A DNA stretch of 63,529 nt, counting the filler, from Octopus bimaculoides (Eukaryota): assembly GCF_001194135.2 (NCBI RefSeq). It is 6 parts of 5 records of this genome, joined end to end, with 100 filler letters (N's around TTAATTAATTAA, not from the genome) between each part and the next. Parts side by side here need not be neighbours in the genome. Positions count along the whole stretch, not along the records: positions 18,894 to 44,839 come from NC_068984.1; 5 more parts are not named here. One strand, written 5' to 3'. The position numbers were made by a program, and so were the translations under genes. Below the pieces are notes generated by a model. It was not told where the DNA came from, searched no databases, and saw nothing but the letters and a program-made list of their open reading frames with translations. Position 1 is the first letter of the stretch, and each line of letters opens with the position of its first letter. Below, piece after piece: positions 29,085-44,840 of the stretch.

Positions 29085-29350
29085 TGCATTCCAGAAGTCT
29101 TAAGGCATTTTCCTTCAAAGTAGGATCCTCTGACGCCAGCTCACTTGTCGCAAGGTTCAAGCCATTTGAAGGCCCCATGGAAGTCCTCCAATAGGAAGAT
29201 GTCAAGGACCCATGTTATATCCTCCATCTTCCCATTGTTTTCAAAACGACTGCCTCTGAGGTACTCTCTCAGCTTCAAGAACAGCCAAAACTCACAGAGG
29301 CAAGGTCTGGATTGTTGGGCGAGTGAGGGATAATTTTGATGCCCATCTCT
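29085..29350 (-). mobile_element. Mariner fragment
   Basis: Minus strand reads NPDLA..EFWLFLKLREYLRGSRFE (degenerate YSPDLAPxD motif). Confidence 0.7.
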
Positions 29351-30474
29351 GTGAAGTAGTTGGTTACTAGATGGAATTGTGACAAGCAGTATTTAGTAGG
29401 TTGTGTATGACAAGCAGCATTGAGTAGAGGTTTTTCATAGTACCGTTACAAACGTCTCCTTTAATCTGGAATAAAAAATATGTTGGTAGTTCATAGTTAG
29501 GACAGTTATAGCTGCTCCTCCTAAAAATGTCTCAAAACTTCTGCAATGCCCTAGTACAAGCAGTTTCTATAGCAACTGTATCGGCTTATGTTTTATTTTC
29601 GTTTTGCTCGTCTTCCTCTCGTCGCCTTTAATGTGTTGCTTCAAAAATTCCCCACAAATTTTTTTCCTAAGCACTTTCTGTACACCTGTAATTAATTATT
29701 CAAATCACCTTGCTGCAAGCTGGAGTTTTTTGCAGTTCTCTGCAGCTATGGACATACCTACAGCTGTTACTCACAGAAAATTAAGTGCGTCGACCATACC
29801 AGTTTCATAAGGGTTCGAAATGCTGCATATACAGCTTGATCTTTTGCTTTATGAATAAAAGTAAAGTACTACGAATTATATTAGGGATGTATGTTCTGTA
29901 TCTTTTTCCACCGTTATTCTTCAAATATATTATGTAAAAAAGTTGGTGATTTTAGCAAAAGTATCAAAACCTAAATGACAGCCTGTATTTAATAAAGACA
30001 CTATTGATTTTTGTGTTGAAATATTTCCAATGTTGTCTCTACATTTTATTCCTCTATTCCCAATAAAATAAGCCAAACAATATATTAAGTAAATATATGT
30101 AAATGAAAAGCAAAATGGCGTTTTATCAGGAAATACTTAATTCAGTCAGCACTGGACGTTACAGTTATATCAGAGTGATCAAAATGATGCGGATCTAAAA
30201 CCTCGTAATATATATGCGAACTGCAAAGCTTTTATAAAAAGGAAGTGTCAACAGTGATATAACATGGTATATAACATCAGTGATATGCACAAAAGTTGCA
30301 TAATTTGTCAGCATGCGTAGAACAAAAAACTAGAGATTTAGGAACCCTAAGAACCCCAGGAAGAGGACCTTATACATCTTCAACGTTGGCGAAATGTGAT
30401 AAACTGGAAATACCTGAAGCAAAAAAAGCCTCATTCTTTTTCACTGACATTGTATATTTCTATATAGTTTAGAG

Positions 30475-32040: not shown

Positions 32041-32955
32041 ATCCCATTAATAATATCGTTTTGATAACCGTTATAAATGCTTCCCCCGATATCATTGCTG
32101 TATCATTAAAAGAAAGACTACAAGACTATTTGGCATGGCGCCTTACATCTTCCCCCTTCAGCTGGTCTCCCAAAAGCCTATTGTTTGCTCCCTCTCAGCT
32201 CTCGCGCTCTCTCTCTCTCTCACACACAGGTTCCGTCTTCTCTACTGCGTCGACAATAGCATCTGCTCTTCGGATCTATCTAATCTCGTGTACCAACTTC
32301 ACGCAGCCATTTTCAGCTCAATCGCCTTTCTTTTCCTTTCGACACATATATTAGGTTCACACATAAACCCAGCATTATTCTCTTTTCTCACTATTTACTC
32401 TCCAACAACGTCAACCTACTCGAACTCTCTTCAGTAATTTTTCTCCAGTTGAGACAATTATCAATTATCCAAATGGCATGTACACGGAATTGACCTACGA
32501 AGGAAATGAGCACAGGAATGAAATGCCGGCCATGTTAGGATACCGCCTTAAAGGGATTTTAGTCGAAAAATTCCACCCCACTACTTGTTTTTACGTCTGG
32601 TACTTATTCTGTCTTTCTCCTTTACCGAACTACGGTCACTGTAAAGAGACCAACACCCGTTATCAAGCGGTGGTGGGACACAAGCACGAAGATATATGTA
32701 GATGTATCTATACATACATATATATAAACACACACACACACACATACACACACACACACACATACACACAAACACTAACACACATTTTTATATATCACGA
32801 TTGACTTCTAGTTCTTGTCTACTAAATTCACTCACAAGCCTTTGGTTGGGAAACAAGCTTCCTACTTCACATTCACCACATCTGCACACACACACACACA
32901 AACACACACACGCACACACACGCATATATATATACATTCATATAAATATATTTAT

Positions 32956-32992
<37 letters not shown>

Positions 32993-34494
32993 GAGTAATT
33001 CAAATAAACGGATAAAGACGTGTGGTTTGAATGTACAAAAAATATATACATGTATACATTTAAAAAGAGAAGACAGACTTAAAAGTCTCAGATGGTTAAC
33101 AGTGAAGTATATATATAATGATTAAAGTAGTTAGACGCAATTCAAAACCAAGAGGAAACAATTCACCGTCATTAAACACCATAATTATTATATAATTTTT
33201 ACATAACCATTTTACGGATTCAGCCTTTGATTCCTAAGGTAAAAGCTATATCCATATACTGACGGAGTTCAATTTAACTTCACCACCCTCAATGAACTGA
33301 ACATTACTGATGAGCATTAAATTTTATGGGGAGTTAGCACCAATCTAATGCCAGTCAATTGTGGTGGGGAGGTTGTCTCCCCTGTCAGTAAATAGAAAAT
33401 GTGCTTTCTGTGGATAAAAAGTAATTTGACTCTTTTATAGCAATGCTGGTGCTCCCTGCACCTTTCGACACTGTTTAGTGACGGTGAATTATTATATATA
33501 TATATATATAAAAGATAATAAGACTGAAAAAACTACAGAAGGCTTGTGTTACATGGTTAAAGTATATATTTAAATAATGTCAGAAAAATGTTAGAAAAAT
33601 GTTAGAAAAATTTTATAAAATCTTTTTGGTATATAAACATTGTATTTTGAGAAATAACCGGTTTCGTGTTGTCTTTTCAAATTTCTCTACTTCATTTTAA
33701 CCTGTTTGCTCCAGTCTTTTTAATAGAATAAACTTTCTAAGATTACATATTACAAAGAATTAAAGGGGAGTAGGCGTTATACGACCGACACCTGTTTCTG
33801 AGAGCTCGGAGTTACTTCATAATGTAGTTCATCAGCAACAGCCAGTAGTGGAAGCAAAAAGTCATTGTAAAGAGACCAACACCTGTTATCAAGCGGTGGT
33901 GGGACACAAGCACGAAGATATATGTAGATGTATCTATACATACATATATATAAACACACACACACATACACACACACACACACACATACACATACACACA
34001 AACACTAACACACATTTTTATATATCACGATTGACTTCTAGTTCTTGTCTACTAAATTCACTAAATTCACTAAATTCTCGATACATTCACAAAGAATATT
34101 ATATTCTAAACAATGTGATATTAATTAACAACATAAAGTTTATTCAACAGAGAATCATAAATATTTGAACATAATATGTCTGTAAATATGATGAGTGTTT
34201 TAGTAAAATGTTTGATATTTTCTAGGTATTCCTGTTATTGAGTAAAATAGTTTCTTTATTAGTTGTTTGATAATTTTCATATATCACCATTGCTACAAAC
34301 AAGTTGTCATCCGTCTTTGGTTGCAAGTGTATACGTATTTGGGTCTGTGGACGAAGGTTGTTTATCTAGTGTGTGTGTCAATCGATCTCCTTCGTTCTCT
34401 CTCTCACTCCTCCCCTCTCTCTCTTTCGCTCACAGACATATGCACGCACACTCGCATACAGCCATTTTCTTAAATTGCGCACATATATTGTTAC

Positions 34495-34623: not shown

Positions 34624-36929
34624 CTGAAAAATTAGCCTTAAAGTAAAATAAAATGGTTGTTGTCGGAAAATCTTGGATCATAGATCTGCTTAAGCCCAAA
34701 TAACCTAGGAGTCAAATTACAAACAACAAAAAGAACTAGAATGTGTAGCGTTAAACAGTTGAATTGCTGTCTACGTTGCATTTCATTCGTTGTTATATTT
34801 AGTCGTTTCCTAAGTCGTAAACGTAGTATTTTTCACATGTAATTTGCATCTAGTGGACGTCAAAGAATTTTTTTAAAAAATGTAATTTTCATAGGAGCAC
34901 AAAAGGTGAAATTATTGCCCAATACATAAAACTATAAATTCTTCACCGAGATTAATCGGGGGATTACTGTTGAGGTGTTCATAAAATGAATAAAATGAAA
35001 ACTAAAAAGACATATTTTCTAAATATATCTTGTGGGTTGCAGAAGTGTTAAATTTTATTCTCAAATTCAATTTTCACATGCGTCCTTTCTAAGTGGAAGC
35101 TAAAACAGTGACATCATAATGATTAACAACAAACGCAGTAGCAGAACGAACCATACAAGTAAAAACAGATGCAAACTAAAGCTTGAAGTCACACATAAAC
35201 ACACAATGAATAGAAGCAATAAAATCTCCCGAAACCACAAGAAAAGTAACAGCGCTGACGGCATATGCATGACGAGTAAAACTTTAGTTATAGTGTAGCA
35301 CTATAAAATATTTTTTCTTTAGAAAAGAAGAGAAATTCAAGAATTACGAGATTAAGATGAATGGTTATTTTGGTGACTTGTTAGGCTGACGTTACACGTT
35401 GTTGAACATAAATTGCATATATGTGAAAAAAGAAGACATATATCACACCTTGTAGAATTAAAGTTTGGTTACGCTTGCGGAATGTAAGTTGCATAAATGC
35501 AATTGAGGTATGAAGACAGTGATGTGTTATTTTACTGTAAAAAAAAAGCAATAGAAGTAAAAGAAATGAAATAAAACTCGCAGTAAATATGCAACAACGT
35601 GCATCTGATAATGAATCATTTCAAAGGCAGAAGAGGTAAAGCGTTGTCGGAAATAGAACCATAACAGTAAGTGTTGAAAAATAAAATAAGCCAAAAAGAG
35701 AAAAGCGAAAACAAGAGGTAAATAATATTATGTAAGAAAATAGAAATGGAAATTAAAAGTATTCTGTTTTGATTTCAAACTATGTACTGTATTCAGTCAG
35801 AATGTTATTGCAGTTTTCTTTCTTTGAGACAAGAAAATATCTAATTGCCAATTTAAACACGAAGATAAGATTTTCTATGAGCATGAGGATAGTTAAAAGT
35901 TATTTGTGGACATCTAGAGCCGTTGCCTGGTATCTGCTTCTAGGGATTCTGTTAAGCGTTGAGTCTGATAAATGCAGGTCTTAGGTATATAAATAAGCAA
36001 GAAAAATACCAAACCACTACTAGCACACAACATATTCAGAGGAAAAAAAGGAAAAGAATCATACATGCATACATAATAGCGAGAAAGGGATAATGAAGAA
36101 TAAACCTTAATATTTTACTGGTATTTTGTGAACATGAAAGCAAAATTAACAACTGAGAGATTCGTATGGACTGTACGAAAACGCGGAACAAATTTTGCAA
36201 GGCATTCTGTTTCATGCTCGAGCGAATCTGGCAAGCACTGTCTTTCAATTTATGCTCAAGACCAAATGAATAATTTATATTTCAATAGGCAGTTGAACAG
36301 TCGCAGACAGTGAAAGCTAACTCAGTGTCTTATTTTGAAGTTGAATATTATTCTCCTCTCGAGATACCCTAACCAGTCGGTCATGTATAGAGGAAACAGT
36401 CTCATCTCTACGTCTACGTGCATATTCAGACATTTGATTCAGTCGCTTTTCCCTGATTTCCCTGATTCAGTTGCCCGTCTTTCTCTCTGCCGTCGTGCCT
36501 TAGCTGCTAAATGTTCTTTTGTAGTAGCATATTTTTTGGGACGCCCTATGTTGAATTGCAGATTTATTATGTGATATTTGTGTAACAACGAAATCAAACC
36601 TGGAGTTTGTGTGCGTGTGTTTATATTGTAGAGTTTACTCTATATACGTAATGTAAAAAAAAATATTTATTGAATGAATTAATGTTATTACATAAATGTG
36701 TCATGTGTTGATGGAGTATTGTAGATATGTAAGCACTAAATACAATGTAAACTGTAGATCCAACTCAATCAGGGCTGATTCTACGTGTGGTATATGTATA
36801 AAAAAGAACACAAACGGGATTAAAATTTACAAGTGCTGTTTCGGAAGGAATTTTGGTTGTATTCATGAATTATATCATAGCATATCATCCAGTATTTTCA
36901 AGTAAAATTTAACCAAATTTAACAGGTGT

Positions 36930-37014
36930 GATAAAACAGTGATGATGACAAATCCAACCAAAATGTTGTATAACTTAAAATGTTGACCGGATTTATCATC
37001 ATGCAGGTTTCATC
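36930..37014 (-). ncRNA. Candidate pri-miRNA-like hairpin (alternative: plus-strand C/D-box snoRNA)
   Basis: 36942-36961 pairs with 36983-37002 (20 contiguous bp on the minus strand including 4 G.U); 36930-36937 pairs with 37007-37014; all five A.C oppositions on plus become G.U on minus. Confidence 0.45.
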
Positions 37015-37185
37015 TGATCTGTGTATACCCATTAAAATTTTACTTGAAGACGGTGTGTTATATGCTATGTTGTATGTGTGCATTTATGTATGTATACATA
37101 TATATATATGCAAAAATATATATAAATATATATATATATGTATACATACATAAATACACACACATACATACACATACACGCACAA

Positions 37186-37239
<54 letters not shown>

Positions 37240-40200
37240 TGTAAGAACCGACTTGAAAAGGGACATACAGTGTCTCGCTAACTTCCATCTTAATTCTAAT
37301 GATATCCTTAGTCTATATTAAACAAATACAATCAAAATCCAACCGGTATCTTGATCTGATGCTAGTCATCTGACTGGCGATGCTACTTTTATGTAGTATC
37401 TGTGTAGAACAAACAAGCATAAGTTGTTCACCTCTTAGCTTAAGTCAACCAGTGCATAGCCAAACCTCAACCATTAATGAATACCAATGAATCTACCTAA
37501 TTGCATTAATAAGAAAAATGAAACCTGTTGTCAGTGTGAGGGTGGAGGTAAAATATTGCTGTTAAATTTAACAAGAAATTATATCTGATATACTTACGTT
37601 ATTAACTTATTACAAAGAGTCACAATGATCAGGTGAGTATTTAAATTAATAAACGGGGGGAAATGATACCATGTATGCAATTACACCACAATATGAAATC
37701 CGGAATTCGAGTTATATTTCGCAACAATTAGTTCATAGGAACGTTTACAGAAGTGAACGATAAACTCAATTACCACAAGGGATAAAAAATTAATTTTTCG
37801 AGTTCTTTTCTTGCGTCTGATAGTGAGAAAATGATAAAAAAAAATTTTTTGACAATAACACATCCGCTATTTTCTTCACTCCCAATCTATGCGAAATTTT
37901 AAATTCTTTATTCGTAACGATAAGGTGTGCGGTATGTTGTATCATTTAACGAAGATCTACTACTTCTCAGTTTGTCTAAAACTAACTGGGTACATGTTTC
38001 CTTCTTAAATGTTCAAGCTAACGAGTGTACCACTAGGCAATCGCTGGAATTGTTAGAAACAACAGCCCCAAAATTCTCCCTATTCACATTCATCAATCAT
38101 GAAAAGAGATGACGTACCAATAAATGTGGTCTCAAATTCACTGTCCCTTTAACTAAGTGACAACGTTCAAAACCAAGGTAACGGTACTGCGTGTAGCAGT
38201 GTCTGATGAACTATTTGAACTTCCTAAAGGAAACGAATTAATGGGACTGGCAAAAGCTATGGCCTCTAAATTGGGAGTTAACTGGAGGTGTTGATATATT
38301 TGTATTGTTGTTCTTGCGCTTATTGTTATTGTTGCTGCTGTTACTGTACGTTTCTAATGTTTTGCCTCGAGCAAATTACCGAACAATTATGTAGACCGAA
38401 CTCGATTCAGCATGCTATATGATAGGCAGGCGATTTGTTATATGGAGTATGATATCGTAAAAATAACATACAAAAGAAAATGCAATGCAAATACATTTAC
38501 AGCAATTACTCCAGATCATAATGGCTGTAATATTTGATATTGATAAAAAAATAAACAAAAAATTAAAAACAAAACAAAAGAGAACACATTCCGATACTGA
38601 GCTAACGGTATTTAGCATTGAATATACAAATTAACTTTGAATGGATAACAATCTTGCAGAGGAGAAATTATCAAATGATAAGCTGATTTTTTAATACAAC
38701 ATTATTTTTCAGATAAATAAATTACTTTACCGTAATTGATTTCCTTCTACTAACATGCAGCATCTTGAAATAGACAAGCACATTGATGGTCGATGTTTAA
38801 ATGTATGTTCGGCGAGAAGATTGCATCATAGGAAAGTGAAGAATGTCAGTGATCTACTTCGCATCGAGCATATTTTTCTATCTGCAATTGGAAGTATTCA
38901 ATATGAACTCAAATATGAAAGAAGGCAGCTGTTGTACAGAACTATTTCACTACAGAATAAATTGCTGTTGAAGTTGGGGGTAACGATTTTAAGCATGAGN
39001 NNNNNNNNNNNNNNNNNNNNNNNNNNNNNNNNNNNNNNNNNNNNNNNNNNNNNNNNNNNNNNNNNNNNNNNNNNNNNNNNNNNNNNNNNNNNNNNNNNNN
39101 NNNNNNNNNNNNNNNNNNNNNNNNNNNNNNNNNNNNNNNNNNNNNNNNNNNNNNNNNNNNNNNNNNNNNNNNNNNNNNNNNNNNNNNNNNNNNNNNNNNN
39201 NNNNNNNNNNNNNNNNNNNNNNNNNNNNNNNNNNNNNNNNNNNNNNNNNNNNNNNNNNNNNNNNNNNNNNNNNNNNNNNNNNNNNNNNNNNNNNNNNNNN
39301 NNNNNNNNNNNNNNNNNNNNNNNNNNNNNNNNNNNNNNNNNNNNNNNNNNNNNNNNNNNNNNNNNNNNNNNNNNNNNNNNNNNNNNNNNNNNNNNNNNNN
39401 NNNNNNNNNNNNNNNNNNNNNNNNNNNNNNNNNNNNNNNNNNNNNNNNNNNNNNNNNNNNNNNNNNNNNNNNNNNNNNNNNNNNNNNNNNNNNNNNNNNN
39501 NNNNNNNNNNNNNNNNNNNNNNNNNNNNNNNNNNNNNNNNNNNNNNNNNNNNNNNNNNNNNNNNNNNNNNNNNNNNNNNNNNNNNNNNNNNNNNNNNNNN
39601 NNNNNNNNNNNNNNNNNNNNNNNNNNNNNNNNNNNNNNNNNNNNNNNNNNNNNNNNNNNNNNNNNNNNNNNNNNNNNNNNNNNNNNNNNNNNNNNNNNNN
39701 NNNNNNNNNNNNNNNNNNNNNNNNNNNNNNNNNNNNNNNNNNNNNNNNNNNNNNNNNNNNNNNNNNNNNNNNNNNNNNNNNNNNNNNNNNNNNNNNNNNN
39801 NNNNNNNNNNNNNNNNNNNNNNNNNNNNNNNNNNNNNNNNNNNNNNNNNNNNNNNNNNNNNNNNNNNNNNNNNNNNNNNNNNNNNNNNNNNNNNNNNNNN
39901 NNNNNNNNNNNNNNNNNNNNNNNNNNNNNNNNNNNNNNNGTGAAATCCTAATCTCCTGTATTGCAAACATAGGACAAAAATAAGATGGGAGACAGAAATG
40001 TCACCTCAGATATGCTAGAAGGAAGAGGTAAAGGACAGGATTTCTTGGAAAACCTCCTCTTAAGTTTATATCGAAGATCAGGCTTTTAAATACGCTCATC
40101 ACAAACACAAATTACACAACAGCAAAAGATCATTTCAATTGAGCTTGAGCTGTAAATTTGCACAGAACACTGCAAGAATTAATAATTCGCACAGACGTTT

Positions 40201-40619: not shown

Positions 40620-42423
40620 ACTACACTTCCAAGAAATGTATGAAGTTTGTTGGGGGTCATAGCTTGTAAAGGATTATGGTTCATTTTTAATTTATTAGTT
40701 TTTTCATGAACTACTAAATCTAAGACTAGAGGACTGTGTCTGTTTAGAATGCAAGGCAGGAGTGCATTGACAGTTCATAGCTAGGTATGGTCATAAATAC
40801 TGTCAAGATTTTAGTAGTAGTATAACGAAACTGTCTATAAAGGAGGCTGAGTAGGGGTAGACCCCGAATCAAGATGTTAATTACCAGTTAAACGGGTACT
40901 GTCGGTGATTGCTTATCAACAATATTGTTATGTCGTATGAAGATAAAATTTAAGATTATCAAAAATGATACCATAACCAAAATAGATAAAATGTGTATAT
41001 ATACCAATTTTCAACATTAAAAAGGGAAGATTACATACAATCAGTTTAATATTCATTCATGTACTTAATCATTTAATTATTAGGTGGCTTCTATAATGAC
41101 TGTTCTGGGCATTTACCTATGGAATACTGGAAAGATAAACATGCTATCTATATATTAATTATAAGCTAAAAATCAGAGAAATATAAAAGTTGTGTACAGA
41201 TGCACACACATGTTTATCTATGTGCACACATGCAAATATACACAAATATTGATACGTTATTATGGATATATTATAATCAGCTCGCATAGACTTAAGTAAC
41301 TAGAAAGTATATATCTCTGTTTCAGAACAGTAACAGCTTATAAGGGATAAGAGATTAATAGGTAAAGATGACAAAATAAGAGAACAAAATAATCAGAATT
41401 TATAGAGAATAGTAAGAAATATAAATAACTTACATTTAAAGAGACAGGGTATTAAAATTTGAGGTAGGAAGAGATAGAGATAACCCCATAGAGGAAGCAA
41501 TAGATATAGGAGTAGTGAGGGCAGTTGGAGGTATTCAGACCGGAGAGGTATTTTATAAGCTGCAAAGTTACCGGTGCTATTTACATATATGATTTTATAG
41601 TTTCTCGGGGGTATATAATTAGGAAACTTACATAAAAGCCATTACAAAAATATAATATGACCAGTAAGGTAGAACATCATAGAAAGGAACAAATAGTTTA
41701 ATCACCAAAAACATGATGAAGTCAGACTAATTAGCCAGGATTATTCATGGGAAAGTAGTTACATGTAGCACAGCACATACCATACCATATAGCTTATAAC
41801 ATATGCAATGCAATTTAATTCACCATATAACACAATATCCGATGATTTTATTATGTATAATACTAGAGGGTAAGTTCACATAAGATACGCCACCAAAAAT
41901 TAATTTCCACCACCTAAGTTCAAATATAGCATCTATAAACGCTAATTTCGAAAATATTTAAATGCACGGGTGACTCTATGTACGCATGATACCCTTAGGC
42001 CTAATCTACCTCAATCATTGCTAGTATATTAATGAAGTTGCTCTTGTCCCTATACTTAAAACTCTCATAAGTTTCCATAGAACACTGCTCACACCCGTAT
42101 CGACTATCTCTATAAGGCTTCGCTTTCCTCATTATATCCCATTTAAGACTAAATTCGATTCCGCTTTCCTTTGGTTACCAAATCTTGCTAGATAAAGACG
42201 TACAATTGGCTTTATGTTTGAGTTTAAAAGATGAAAAATGGTTATTAATACGTTTTTTCTATTTATCGAACATCCTGTATATAAATTTACCAGCCACAGT
42301 TATGATTGTACATTTATAAATTGCGTTTTGGATTAGACATCGGCCTAATATACGGACAGTGGGATTTAACTTTACAATTGCAACCAGTAGAATTACTACT
42401 ATTAACATTATTGATATTCATAC

Positions 42424-42489
<66 letters not shown>

Positions 42490-43630
42490 CATCATTATTA
42501 ATATCACTATTATTATTAATCCTACTACTACTATTGCATGTGTTATTTTCATATCTGTTATCATCTATCCTTCCCTCAACTGTAGTATTATTCAAATTCA
42601 TCTCAGCATCAACAAGCATGTCAGTAATATCTGTGCTAGTATAGATCTCGGAATTACAGTCTATATTGTATATATTAGATGCGTTAGTACCGTTGTTTCT
42701 ATTTCTTACGTCACCATTAATATTATTCTCAGTGTAGGGTTTTAAGTTAGTGTTGACTGTAATATTATCATTGACACGTCTTGCTAACTTTATATACTTC
42801 CTATTTAACCTTGCTATGATGGTACCAATATTAGGGAGGGTAGAATACGAGATTCTAATTGTCTTACAAGAAAAAGTTCTGTTATATCGATGGAAAGCAG
42901 GGACATTTTTTTCTAATATTATCATAAAGTTCCTATATATGTTTGTGGATATGGCACAGTTGAAGGGAACGTTATACCAGATCAAGTCATTATTTTCAGA
43001 CTTCTGTCGTGTGTAAGGGCGGAATCTACCTGCTTTTTCAACGCCTCCCAAAATTGTGACTTGGTTATTAGGTATGGCTCCATCATCAGTATTTTTCTTA
43101 TCATTATAGGGTGGAGTAACTTGCCCGTTCACCTGACTAACTTTATTATCTAAACTAAAATTCATACTTGTTATAACATCTAATTTCCTATTGTTGCTTA
43201 TATTTTTATTTGAATTGATGGGTTAGTTGGATGCTTTCCTAGTTGGTTTGTTTTCTCGACCAATTAAGTTTGTAGTCCTCCTCTCACTTAAAATCTCATT
43301 ATTTTTATTATTATTAGGTGTTATACTTTCAGGATTAAGAACGGTAATTTCATGGTCGTATCTTGCCTTAGATAAGGCGAAGTTGTAGTGGGGGGAATGG
43401 GTATTAAAAATGTTTTATTAGCTAATAATTTCGTAATTATCTTAGAAATACTTTTGACCATCGATGTTACCATATTAGCGGGGTGATTTGATAATTTGTT
43501 CACGTACCACGTAACTTCACCTGGTTTCCTATAAGGGTGGTATAATCCTGAGTTAGTATCTAAAGTAGTATCTAAGAAATTTGCTACCTTTGTGCCGTAT
43601 TCAAACGTTATACCTAAGCTGAAGCTTTAA
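40620..43630 (-). mobile_element. Penelope-like retroelement (RT C-terminus, Asn-rich linker, GIY-YIG endonuclease, long 3' region)
   Basis: ANFLDTTLD..LYHPYRKP, SNHP, IWYNVPF..ISTNI..ISYSTLPNI, CNCKVKSHCP, HFSSFKLKHKANCTSLSSKIW..LKWDI..CEQCSME; the 40620 boundary is approximate. Confidence 0.88.
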
Positions 43631-43908: not shown

Positions 43909-44055
43909 ATATATATATATATATATAATTCATATAAAATTAATAACACCTACATTGCAAACAGCAATATAAGTGTTATTCACACCTTTAGCCAAGTTTC
44001 TTTGACGATTANNNNNNNNNNNNNNNNNNNNNNNNNNNNNNNNNNNNNNNNNNNN

Positions 44056-44840
44056 TTTTGCTATTTTTGTTTTGAGATGGATAAGTTGAAAATTCGTAGT
44101 TTTAAAATATGAGTTCTTTCTTGGAGATACAGCATCACAGACAGCTCGGAATATTATTCTAATGTTATTACACTTCCGACTGTATCGAATTGTTTTGCAA
44201 AATTTCGTTCTGGTAACTTTGACCTCACAAATGAGCAACGCGGTCGACCAGAAACAAAGATAGATAACGTCGAATTGAAAGCTACTGTCGAGTCAGATCC
44301 ATCTCAAAGTGCCCGTGAATTATCGTTGTTGTTTTGTGATAGCTAGCAAACAATATTGATTCACCTAGTTCAAATCGGTACAGTGAAAAATTTGGATAAG
44401 TGGGTTGCACATGAACTCAATGAAAATCAGAAACAGCAACGTTTTGATGACTGCATTATGCTACTTTCACGTCACAAAAATGAATCATTTTTGAATCGAA
44501 TTGTGATGAGAAATGGATCCAATACAACAACCGTTAAACGTTCAGGTCAAAGGTTGAACAAAAACGAGCCACCAAAACGCAGTCTAAAAGCAAAATTCAT
44601 CAAAAGAAGCTGATGGTATGTTTGGTGGTCTGGCGCAGGGGTGATCCATTATGATTTCATTAAACCTGGCTTATCAATCACGGCCGAAGTATACTGCAGC
44701 CAACTGGACCAAATGATGCAGAAACTTACATAAAAACAGCAGTGATTAGTCAACAGATCCACTTCATTTTTATTGCAAGAAAACGCCAGATCACACATCA
44801 CCAAAATGACTTTGGCGAAACTACAGGAGTTGGAGTTGGN
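44056..44840 (+). mobile_element. Mariner transposase remnant
   Basis: YEFFLGDTASQTARNI, FRSGNFDLTNEQRGRP, LDKWVAHELNENQK, LLQENARSH. Confidence 0.9.

What the first reader, a model, noticed from the sequence alone, without database searches (positions are those of the whole stretch)
36930..37014. Strand-asymmetric pri-miRNA-like hairpin in a TE-poor island
Seen: on the minus strand, 36942-36961 and 36983-37002 form 20 contiguous pairs. A 4x4 internal loop and an 8-bp basal stem (36930-36937/37007-37014) follow, giving about 32 bp in total. All five A.C oppositions on the plus strand become G.U wobbles on the minus strand. Random decay of a DNA inverted repeat would not be expected to favour one strand this way. 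A CACC (CNNC) lies just 3' of the stem on the minus strand. Established: animal pri-miRNAs have stems of about 35 bp and often a downstream CNNC, and coleoids have an expanded miRNA repertoire. Inference: a possibly undescribed miRNA (5p about AUGAUGAUAAAUCCGGUCAACA, 3p about UUUUGGUUGGAUUUGUCAUCAU), on the same strand as FLAD1. Competing reading: a plus-strand C/D snoRNA (RUGAUGA at 36939/36942, CUGA at 37014-37017, short ACAG/CUGU terminal stem), although its box C would be buried in the hairpin.
Basis: partly seen in the sequence, partly recalled or inferred. Interest (0 to 1): 0.7.

Follow-up and report, generated by a model that had tools for sequence, protein, structure and literature searches.

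The report
Hairpin inside a decayed 194-base palindrome
The hairpin is real, but it is the centre of a longer worn-down inverted repeat in non-coding DNA, and nothing I could test shows that it is a microRNA or a snoRNA, so it is most likely an ordinary repeat relic.

Summary
On the minus strand, 37002-36983 pairs with 36961-36942 over 20 uninterrupted base pairs, four of them G.U. Two more pairs and an 8-bp lower stem (one G.U) follow, around a 21-nt loop. The 85-nt fold is -27.7 kcal/mol (z -4.7), and the minus strand folds better than the plus strand.

The hairpin is only the core of a 194-nt imperfect palindrome, 36876-37069. Its arms are about 72% alike, with perfect outer blocks of 14/14 and 10/10 in register.

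Over the whole palindrome, transitions give G.U on the minus strand 10 times and on the plus strand 4 times (p = 0.18). There are also 9 transversions and 3 indels. A 20-column pairable run on one strand arises in about 16% of permuted palindromes with the same differences. The strand-asymmetry argument is therefore weak.

No Rfam family matches. The UG, UGU and CNNC motifs are not at canonical positions. There is no second copy in the piece, no FLAD1 exon in the piece, and no relative in any reachable collection. Small-RNA reads, orthologous loci and genome copy number could not be tested.

Best reading: a neutral palindromic repeat relic (about 0.7). A young miRNA or hairpin-RNA precursor is about 0.1, and a C/D snoRNA about 0.02.

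The parts
36876..37069 (.). Whole imperfect palindrome (194 nt), symmetry axis at about 36972. The arms are 62/86 identical after reverse-complementing.
   Evidence: Local and global arm alignments. Self-BLAST inverted match at 66.7% over 195 nt, E 1.7e-7. 186-nt folds: minus -53.8 kcal/mol, z -5.65; plus -49.7, z -4.5.
36983..37002 (-). 5' arm of the 20-bp upper helix (AUGAUGAUAAAUCCGGUCAA); candidate 5p strand.
36942..36961 (-). 3' arm of the 20-bp upper helix (UUGGUUGGAUUUGUCAUCAU); candidate 3p strand.
36962..36982 (-). 21-nt apical loop. It keeps partial palindromic symmetry (4 Watson-Crick pairs of 9 possible, read from the sequence).
37007..37014 (-). 5' half of the 8-bp lower stem (GAUGAAAC).
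36930..36937 (-). 3' half of the 8-bp lower stem (GUUUUAUC; one G.U).
36897..36910 (.). Outer palindrome block TTCAAGTAAAATTT, a perfect 14/14 complement of 37035-37048, in register with the core.
37035..37048 (.). Partner of the 14-bp outer block.
36876..36885 (.). Terminal block CATAGCATAT, a perfect 10/10 complement of 37060-37069; the left end of the palindrome.
37060..37069 (.). Terminal block ATATGCTATG; the right end of the palindrome.
36925..36928 (-). CACC (CNNC-type motif). It starts 10-12 nt 3' of the predicted 3p cut rather than 16-18 nt.
   Evidence: Read, with the structure.
36939..36945 (+). GTGATGA, a box-C-like heptamer. It lies in the left arm and is paired in the plus-strand fold.
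37014..37017 (+). CTGA, a box-D-like tetramer.

Best explanation
The hairpin is the best-preserved central part of a 194-bp palindromic DNA repeat (36876-37069) in AT-rich, non-coding, microsatellite-rich DNA. The repeat is most likely a relic of a small foldback or MITE-like element, or of a local inverted duplication. Its arms have since drifted to about 72% identity.

Some of the accumulated transitions happen to leave the inner 30 pairs foldable as minus-strand RNA through G.U wobbles. If the region is transcribed, the RNA would fold into a long imperfect duplex. It would then be a passive substrate for dsRNA-acting enzymes such as ADAR, which acts on intronic and UTR hairpins in octopus. 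There is no evidence that it is a dedicated small-RNA gene.

Shown: the palindrome, its extent, the fold energies and the substitution counts. Inferred: the origin as a repeat and the neutrality.
For: The palindrome extends well beyond a pri-miRNA stem, with in-register perfect blocks of 14/14 and 10/10. The arm differences include 9 transversions and 3 indels as well as transitions. The polarity of transitions is not significantly skewed overall (10:4, p = 0.18).

A 20-column pairable run on one strand is expected in about 16% of palindromes with the same number of differences. Both strands fold far better than shuffles (z -5.65 and -4.5), as expected for a DNA-level inverted repeat.

No Rfam family reaches threshold, and only chance-level hits appear at relaxed thresholds. 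There is no protein-coding signal around it. A weak Mos1-type HTH remnant in the piece shows that DNA transposons were active here.

Base rate: this piece holds about one such helix per 24 kb. O. vulgaris has only 164 annotated miRNA genes (PMC9699675). Good hairpins therefore vastly outnumber miRNAs.
Against: There is no second copy in the 24 kb available. There is no canonical target-site duplication; the flanks are TTATAT and TTGTAT, 5/6 alike, in AT-rich DNA. Genome-wide copy number could not be tested.

The inner part of the palindrome (36911-36961) does show a 9:1 excess of minus-compatible transitions (p = 0.02, chosen post hoc). This is what weak selection on a minus-strand RNA fold would also produce.
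Confidence: 0.7

Rival explanations
1. A young, lineage-restricted miRNA (or short hairpin-RNA/endo-siRNA) precursor transcribed from the minus strand, born from the palindrome. Drosha would cut about 22 bp below the loop and about 11 bp above the junction at the base of the 8-bp lower stem. This would release a duplex of roughly (UGC)AUGAUGAUAAAUCCGGUCAA(CA) and UUGGUUGGAUUUGUCAUCAUCA.
For: The stem has 20+2+8 pairs and a 21-nt loop. The MFE structure equals the centroid, with z -4.7 for the 85-nt hairpin. The distances of about 22 bp from the loop and 10-11 bp from the lower internal loop fit the Microprocessor ruler (my knowledge of the pri-miRNA model).

All five non-Watson-Crick oppositions in the hairpin are G.U on the minus strand, and the count is 9:1 in the inner palindrome. 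The minus strand is 4.8 kcal/mol more stable than the plus strand. Coleoids have many novel miRNA families, and the authors say their count is an underestimate. Palindromic transposon relics are a known source of new miRNAs (my knowledge: human mir-548 from Made1).
Against: The asymmetry is weak and was selected post hoc (p = 0.06 and 0.18; 16% by permutation). Three consecutive wobble pairs (G.U, G.U, U.G) sit in the duplex. The flanks are not single-stranded but continue pairing to 194 nt.

There is no basal UG at -14 and no apical UGU, and CNNC starts at +10 to +12 instead of +16 to +18 (read; the motif positions are from my knowledge of human pri-miRNAs, and their relevance to molluscs is not established). 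No Rfam miRNA family matches (mir-580, 24 bits against a gathering score of 83).

The arm sequences are absent from the text and the held supplements of the octopus miRNA paper, although its miRNA FASTA is not among the held files. The prior is very low, from the ratio of hairpins to miRNA genes.
Confidence: 0.1
2. A plus-strand box C/D snoRNA of about 87 nt (36936-37022), with box C GUGAUGA (36939-45), box D CUGA (37014-17) and an ACAG/CUGU terminal stem. It would guide 2'-O-methylation through the stretch upstream of box D.
For: Both box consensus sequences and a 4-bp terminal complementarity are present, at a spacing typical of C/D snoRNAs. The best relaxed-threshold C/D hit lies on this strand and span (SNORD33, 36932-37012).
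Against: That hit has 19.5 bits against a gathering score of 44, with E = 1 in a search of only 551 nt. Nothing reaches gathering thresholds.

Box C is part of the palindrome arm and is paired with 36994-37002 in the plus-strand MFE and centroid folds. The terminal stem consumes the R of box C and leaves an unpaired U after box D, so the kink-turn register is off. There is no internal D' or C' box. The boxes are explained by the (TGA)n-like arm sequence and its complement.
Confidence: 0.02
3. Chance hairpin with no inverted-repeat history.
For: The DNA is AT-rich and low in complexity, which raises background pairing.
Against: 0/200 shuffles fold as well. It is the only non-repetitive helix of 20 bp or more in 24 kb on either strand. 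The in-register 14/14 and 10/10 outer blocks have a chance probability that I estimate at 1e-6 or lower.
Confidence: 0.01

Closest known systems
Palindromic MITEs and foldback relics, such as the human Made1 element that gave rise to mir-548 (from my knowledge)
   Same: It is short (about 200 bp), AT-rich and non-coding. It is almost entirely two inverted arms that fold into a long hairpin on either strand. The terminal blocks are well preserved, and mariner-type remnants lie in the same region.
   Different: There is no TA or other clear target-site duplication. No second copy was seen in 24 kb. The family, the termini and the genome-wide copy number are all untested.
Canonical animal pri-miRNA hairpins, including the novel coleoid and octopus families of Zolotarov et al. 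2022 (PMC9699675)
   Same: An imperfect stem of about 30-34 bp, a loop longer than 10 nt, a clean 22-nt duplex region, and G.U pairs tolerated on the putative sense strand.
   Different: There is no expression or conservation evidence and no family match. The sequence motifs are not at canonical positions. The stem continues into a 194-nt palindrome instead of single-stranded flanks.
Box C/D snoRNAs (SNORD33-like by the Rfam best hit)
   Same: RUGAUGA and CUGA about 68 nt apart, with short terminal complementarity on the plus strand.
   Different: The score is at chance level. Box C is sequestered, the kink-turn register is imperfect, there are no D'/C' boxes, and no target is known.
Long intronic or UTR dsRNA hairpins that serve as ADAR substrates in cephalopods (PMC9699675)
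   Same: A long imperfect duplex that would form if the region is transcribed.
   Different: Neither transcription nor editing of this locus is shown. This would be a passive property, not a gene.

Membership tests
Animal miRNA gene (MirGeneDB-type criteria) | Hairpin whose two about-22-nt arms are complementary at 16 or more positions, with a loop of 8 nt or more | tested here: met
   20/20 pairs (16 Watson-Crick and 4 G.U) plus 2 more, and a 21-nt loop.
Animal miRNA gene (MirGeneDB-type criteria) | Stem of about 35 bp bounded by single-stranded basal segments (Microprocessor substrate) | tested here: inconclusive
   The stem has 30-34 bp, but the flanks pair on: a 4x4 loop, 4 bp, 5x5 loops, then about 19 more pairs, out to 194 nt.
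Animal miRNA gene (MirGeneDB-type criteria) | Reads from both arms with homogeneous 5' ends and 2-nt 3' overhangs | not testable with these tools
   No small-RNA data are available.
Animal miRNA gene (MirGeneDB-type criteria) | Presence of the hairpin in a second species, with conservation of the mature arms | not testable with these tools
   No cephalopod genome is reachable. Attempts through ORF look-ups, a protein search and DNA pattern scans found nothing related.
Animal miRNA gene (MirGeneDB-type criteria) | Basal UG, apical UGU/GUG and a 3' CNNC at 16-18 nt (helpful motifs, not obligatory) | tested here: not met
   Read from the structure. There is no UG at -14 for any 5p start at 37005-37001, and no UGU at the apical junction. 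CNNC (36928-25) starts 10-12 nt after the predicted 3p end.
Any described miRNA family (Rfam 15) | Covariance-model score at or above the family gathering threshold | tested here: not met
   0 hits at gathering. The best hit on the hairpin is mir-580, 24.4 bits against 83.
Box C/D snoRNA | Box C RUGAUGA near the 5' end and box D CUGA near the 3' end | tested here: met
   GTGATGA at 36939-45 and CTGA at 37014-17 on the plus strand.
Box C/D snoRNA | Terminal 4-6-bp stem that directly brackets the boxes, so that C and D form a kink-turn, with box C free to do so | tested here: not met
   ACAG/CUGU uses the R of box C and leaves U37018 unpaired. Box C is paired with 36994-37002 in the MFE and centroid folds.
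Box C/D snoRNA | Guide of 10 nt or more, complementary to rRNA or snRNA upstream of box D or D' | not testable with these tools
   No rRNA of the source organism is available.
Box C/D snoRNA | Match to a curated C/D family | tested here: not met
   SNORD33, 19.5 bits against a gathering score of 44, E = 1. Nothing at gathering.
MITE / palindromic DNA-transposon relic | Terminal inverted repeats, small size, no coding capacity | tested here: met
   10/10 terminal blocks, arms 72% alike, 194 bp. There are no Pfam domains in the surrounding stop-free stretches.
MITE / palindromic DNA-transposon relic | Target-site duplication flanking the termini | tested here: inconclusive
   The flanks are TTATAT (36870-75) and TTGTAT (37070-75), 5/6 alike, in AT-rich DNA next to a microsatellite. 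There is no TA, TTAA or 8-bp duplication.
MITE / palindromic DNA-transposon relic | Multiple dispersed copies in the genome | not testable with these tools
   There is no other copy in the 24-kb piece. The genome is not available.

The most novel reading that the evidence does not exclude
A newly born, species- or genus-restricted miRNA (or short hairpin-RNA) gene on the minus strand. It would be caught at the stage where a palindromic repeat has begun to be shaped by selection for the RNA fold: transitions are tolerated only as G.U on the sense strand in the inner about 60 nt, while the outer palindrome decays freely.
Probability: 0.08. Interest if true: 0.35.

Novelty: new member of a known kind. 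Interest (0 to 1): 0.15.

Why it matters
If it were a real miRNA, it would add one more lineage-specific gene to the already large octopus repertoire of 90 novel families. It would also give a concrete example of a miRNA born from a palindromic repeat, an origin that the octopus miRNA paper says is unknown.

As it stands, it matters mainly as a caution. A clean 30-bp hairpin with one-sided G.U pairs is expected fairly often in decayed inverted repeats. It should not be called a miRNA without reads or conservation.

Tried and rejected
1. Rfam at gathering thresholds over the whole piece gave nothing. Relaxed thresholds around the hairpin gave only chance-level hits. The stronger hits (mir-297, mir-466 and others) lie on the adjacent TA/CA microsatellite at 37070-37250, not on the hairpin.

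2. FLAD1 context: Pfam on minus-strand stop-free stretches of 29.5-44.8 kb found 0 families. tblastn with a remembered human FLAD1 sequence, used as a lead only, gave no hit better than E = 1. Motif searches also failed. The same-strand-as-host-gene argument cannot be checked in this piece.

3. Other copies in the piece: none by blastn-short, by a 3-mismatch pattern search, or by self-BLAST.

4. Relatives elsewhere: the degenerate arm pattern gave only single-arm chance hits in viral, metagenome and prokaryote collections. None extended beyond 29 nt.

5. ORF trick to fetch eukaryotic DNA: four ORFs in or near the palindrome are not on record. The 54-aa ORF across the hairpin has no homologue.

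6. Organism identification through a transposon-like ORF at 42.3-43.6 kb gave only two unnamed ENA proteins, so the source species is not verified.

7. Literature: the arm sequences occur in no paper text and in none of the held supplements of PMC9699675. That paper's miRNA sequence file is not among the held files, so this is a weak negative.

8. tRNA or SINE origin: ARAGORN found no tRNA-like genes in the piece.

Full report
**Observation**

- On the minus strand, AUGAUGAUAAAUCCGGUCAA (37002-36983) pairs with UUGGUUGGAUUUGUCAUCAU (36961-36942) over 20 uninterrupted pairs, four of them G.U.
- GAUGAAAC (37014-37007) pairs with GUUUUAUC (36937-36930) over eight pairs, one of them G.U.
It also adds an ACAG/CUGU helix beyond a 4x4 loop.

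| Stretch folded | Strand | MFE (kcal/mol) | z-score |
|---|---|---|---|
| 85 nt | minus | -27.7 | -4.7 |
| 116 nt | minus | -31.9 | -4.0 |
| 116 nt | plus | -27.1 | -2.6 |

In a scan of the 24 kb of readable sequence, this is the only non-low-complexity uninterrupted helix of 20 bp or more on either strand. It is one of two unbranched non-repetitive hairpins at -30 kcal/mol or lower per 110 nt. The other is at 19024-19133. The hairpin is therefore real and not a chance fold.

**What surrounds it**

The hairpin is only the core of a longer inverted repeat.
- BLAST of the region against itself found a perfect 14/14 inverted match between 36897-36910 and 37035-37048.
- Arm alignment extends the symmetry to a perfect 10/10 terminal block, 36876-36885 with 37060-37069.
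- Self-BLAST of the piece reports the whole 36876-37069 as an inverted self-match of 66.7% over 195 nt.
- The 186-nt region folds as one long hairpin on both strands: minus -53.8 kcal/mol, z -5.65; plus -49.7, z -4.5.
- The 21-nt loop also keeps partial symmetry about position 36972.

The object is thus a 194-nt decayed palindrome. It is not an isolated 35-bp stem with single-stranded flanks.

**The strand-asymmetry argument**

I aligned the left arm to the reverse complement of the right arm and classified every difference.

| Region | Matches | Transitions: G.U on minus | Transitions: G.U on plus | Transversions | Indels | Binomial p |
|---|---|---|---|---|---|---|
| Whole palindrome | 62 | 10 | 4 | 9 | 3 | 0.18 |
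| Inner half, 36911-36961 (chosen post hoc) | | 9 | 1 | | | 0.02 |
| Outer part | | 1 | 3 | | | |

The wobbles are clustered: three consecutive at 36956-58 and four at 36914-17. They may therefore not be independent events.

I then permuted the alignment columns and the transition polarities. An uninterrupted 20-column pairable run on one strand or the other arises in about 16% of palindromes with the same numbers of differences. That inference is suggestive at best.

**miRNA features**

In favour:
- The upper stem of 20+2 pairs and the lower stem of 8 pairs fit the rule of about 22 bp from the loop and about 11 bp from the base (my knowledge of the Microprocessor model).
- The MFE structure equals the centroid.

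Against:
- The flanks pair on instead of being single-stranded.
- For any 5p start between 37005 and 37001 there is no UG at -14 and no apical UGU.
- The CACC at 36928-36925 begins 10-12 nt after the predicted 3p end rather than 16-18 nt (read). These motif positions come from my knowledge of human pri-miRNAs, and their relevance in molluscs is not established.
- No Rfam family reaches its gathering score anywhere in the piece. The best relaxed hit on the hairpin is mir-580, at 24 bits against a threshold of 83.
- The arm sequences appear in no paper text and in none of the held supplements of the octopus miRNA study. The miRNA sequence file of that study is not among the held files.

**Base rate**

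That study annotates 164 miRNA genes in O. vulgaris, 90 of the families being novel, and calls this an underestimate. This piece holds about one comparable helix per 24 kb. Scaled to a genome of a few Gb (size from my knowledge), that implies on the order of 1e5 such hairpins. The estimate rests on a single observation and is crude. It still puts the prior for any one good hairpin being a miRNA well below 1%. The weak G.U asymmetry and the good geometry raise it to roughly 0.1 in my judgement.

**snoRNA alternative**

The plus strand carries GTGATGA (36939-45), CTGA (37014-17) and ACAG/CTGT. Against the snoRNA reading:
- The heptamer is part of the (TGA)n-like palindrome arm and is paired with 36994-37002 in the plus-strand MFE and centroid folds.
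- The terminal stem uses the R of box C and leaves a nucleotide unpaired after box D.
- There are no internal boxes.
- The best C/D hit, SNORD33, scores 19.5 bits against a gathering score of 44, with E = 1 in a 551-nt search.

I could not test a guide-target match, because no rRNA was available.

**Context**

No FLAD1 exon is present in the piece.
- Pfam on minus-strand stop-free stretches from 29.5 to 44.8 kb found nothing.
- tblastn with a remembered human FLAD1 sequence, used as a lead only, found nothing better than E = 1.

The host-gene strand argument therefore cannot be checked. The piece is AT-rich, full of TA/CA/TC microsatellites and assembly gaps. It contains repeated elements elsewhere and weak transposase remnants. 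The source organism could not be verified: a transposon-like ORF gave only two unnamed ENA hits.

**Search for relatives**

- There is no other copy in the piece.
- A degenerate pattern matching either arm found 1, 77 and 61 single-arm hits in the viral, metagenome and prokaryote collections. None extended beyond 29 nt, so they are chance matches.
- Exact look-ups of four ORFs in or near the palindrome, and a homology search with the ORF that spans it, found nothing.

Conservation and genome copy number remain untested.

**Conclusion**

The most likely reading is a neutral relic of a palindromic repeat, either a small foldback or MITE-like element or a local inverted duplication. Its inner 30 pairs remain foldable, and slightly better as minus-strand RNA. 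If transcribed, it would be a passive dsRNA substrate, for instance for ADAR, which acts on intronic and UTR hairpins in octopus.

| Reading | Probability |
|---|---|
| Neutral palindromic repeat relic | about 0.7 |
| Young minus-strand miRNA or hairpin-RNA gene (not excluded) | about 0.1 |
| C/D snoRNA | about 0.02 |

The tests that would decide are small-RNA read mapping, genome-wide copy number and orthologous alignments.

Noticed in passing
window 37070-37250: A compound TA/TG/CA microsatellite lies directly next to the right end of the palindrome. It forms long self-complementary folds (-50.5 kcal/mol per 110 nt). It also draws sub-threshold Rfam hits to repeat-derived miRNA families (mir-297 at 45.7 bits, mir-466 at 39.6 bits), which are low-complexity artefacts.
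   Followed up: partly
window 32635-32832 and 33861-34062: Two direct copies of an element of about 200 nt, 96% identical and 1.2 kb apart, each running into a CA/TA microsatellite. They look like a recent segmental duplication or a pair of SINE-like insertions.
   Followed up: no
window 23958-24193 and 24347-24589 (also 24017-24138 against 32558-32669, inverted): Older copies (about 70% identity) of another dispersed repeat. Their translations share a recurring motif, which suggests a SINE-like family, but ARAGORN finds no tRNA-like head in the piece.
   Followed up: partly
window 44113-44610 (+) and 29144-29445 (-): Degenerate mariner/Mos1-type transposase remnants. The first gives a weak Pfam HTH_48 match (17.6 bits, below the cutoff). 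The second shows a C-terminal transposase-like pattern by eye only.
   Followed up: partly
window 42314-43626 (-): ORFs of 283 aa and about 101 aa with a long poly-Asn run and no Pfam domain. Only two distant relatives were found (24-27% identity), both unnamed ENA proteins. This may be an uncharacterised transposon or retroelement protein.
   Followed up: partly
window 19024-19133: A second unbranched, non-repetitive hairpin (-35.2 kcal/mol on plus, -31.3 on minus). It is GC-richer, and its z-score is only -2.4, so it is less exceptional than the finding.
   Followed up: partly
window 20432-21025, 39000-39939, 44012-44055: Runs of N (assembly gaps) inside the piece. The one at 39.0-39.9 kb lies 2 kb from the finding, so the context there is incomplete.
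   Followed up: no
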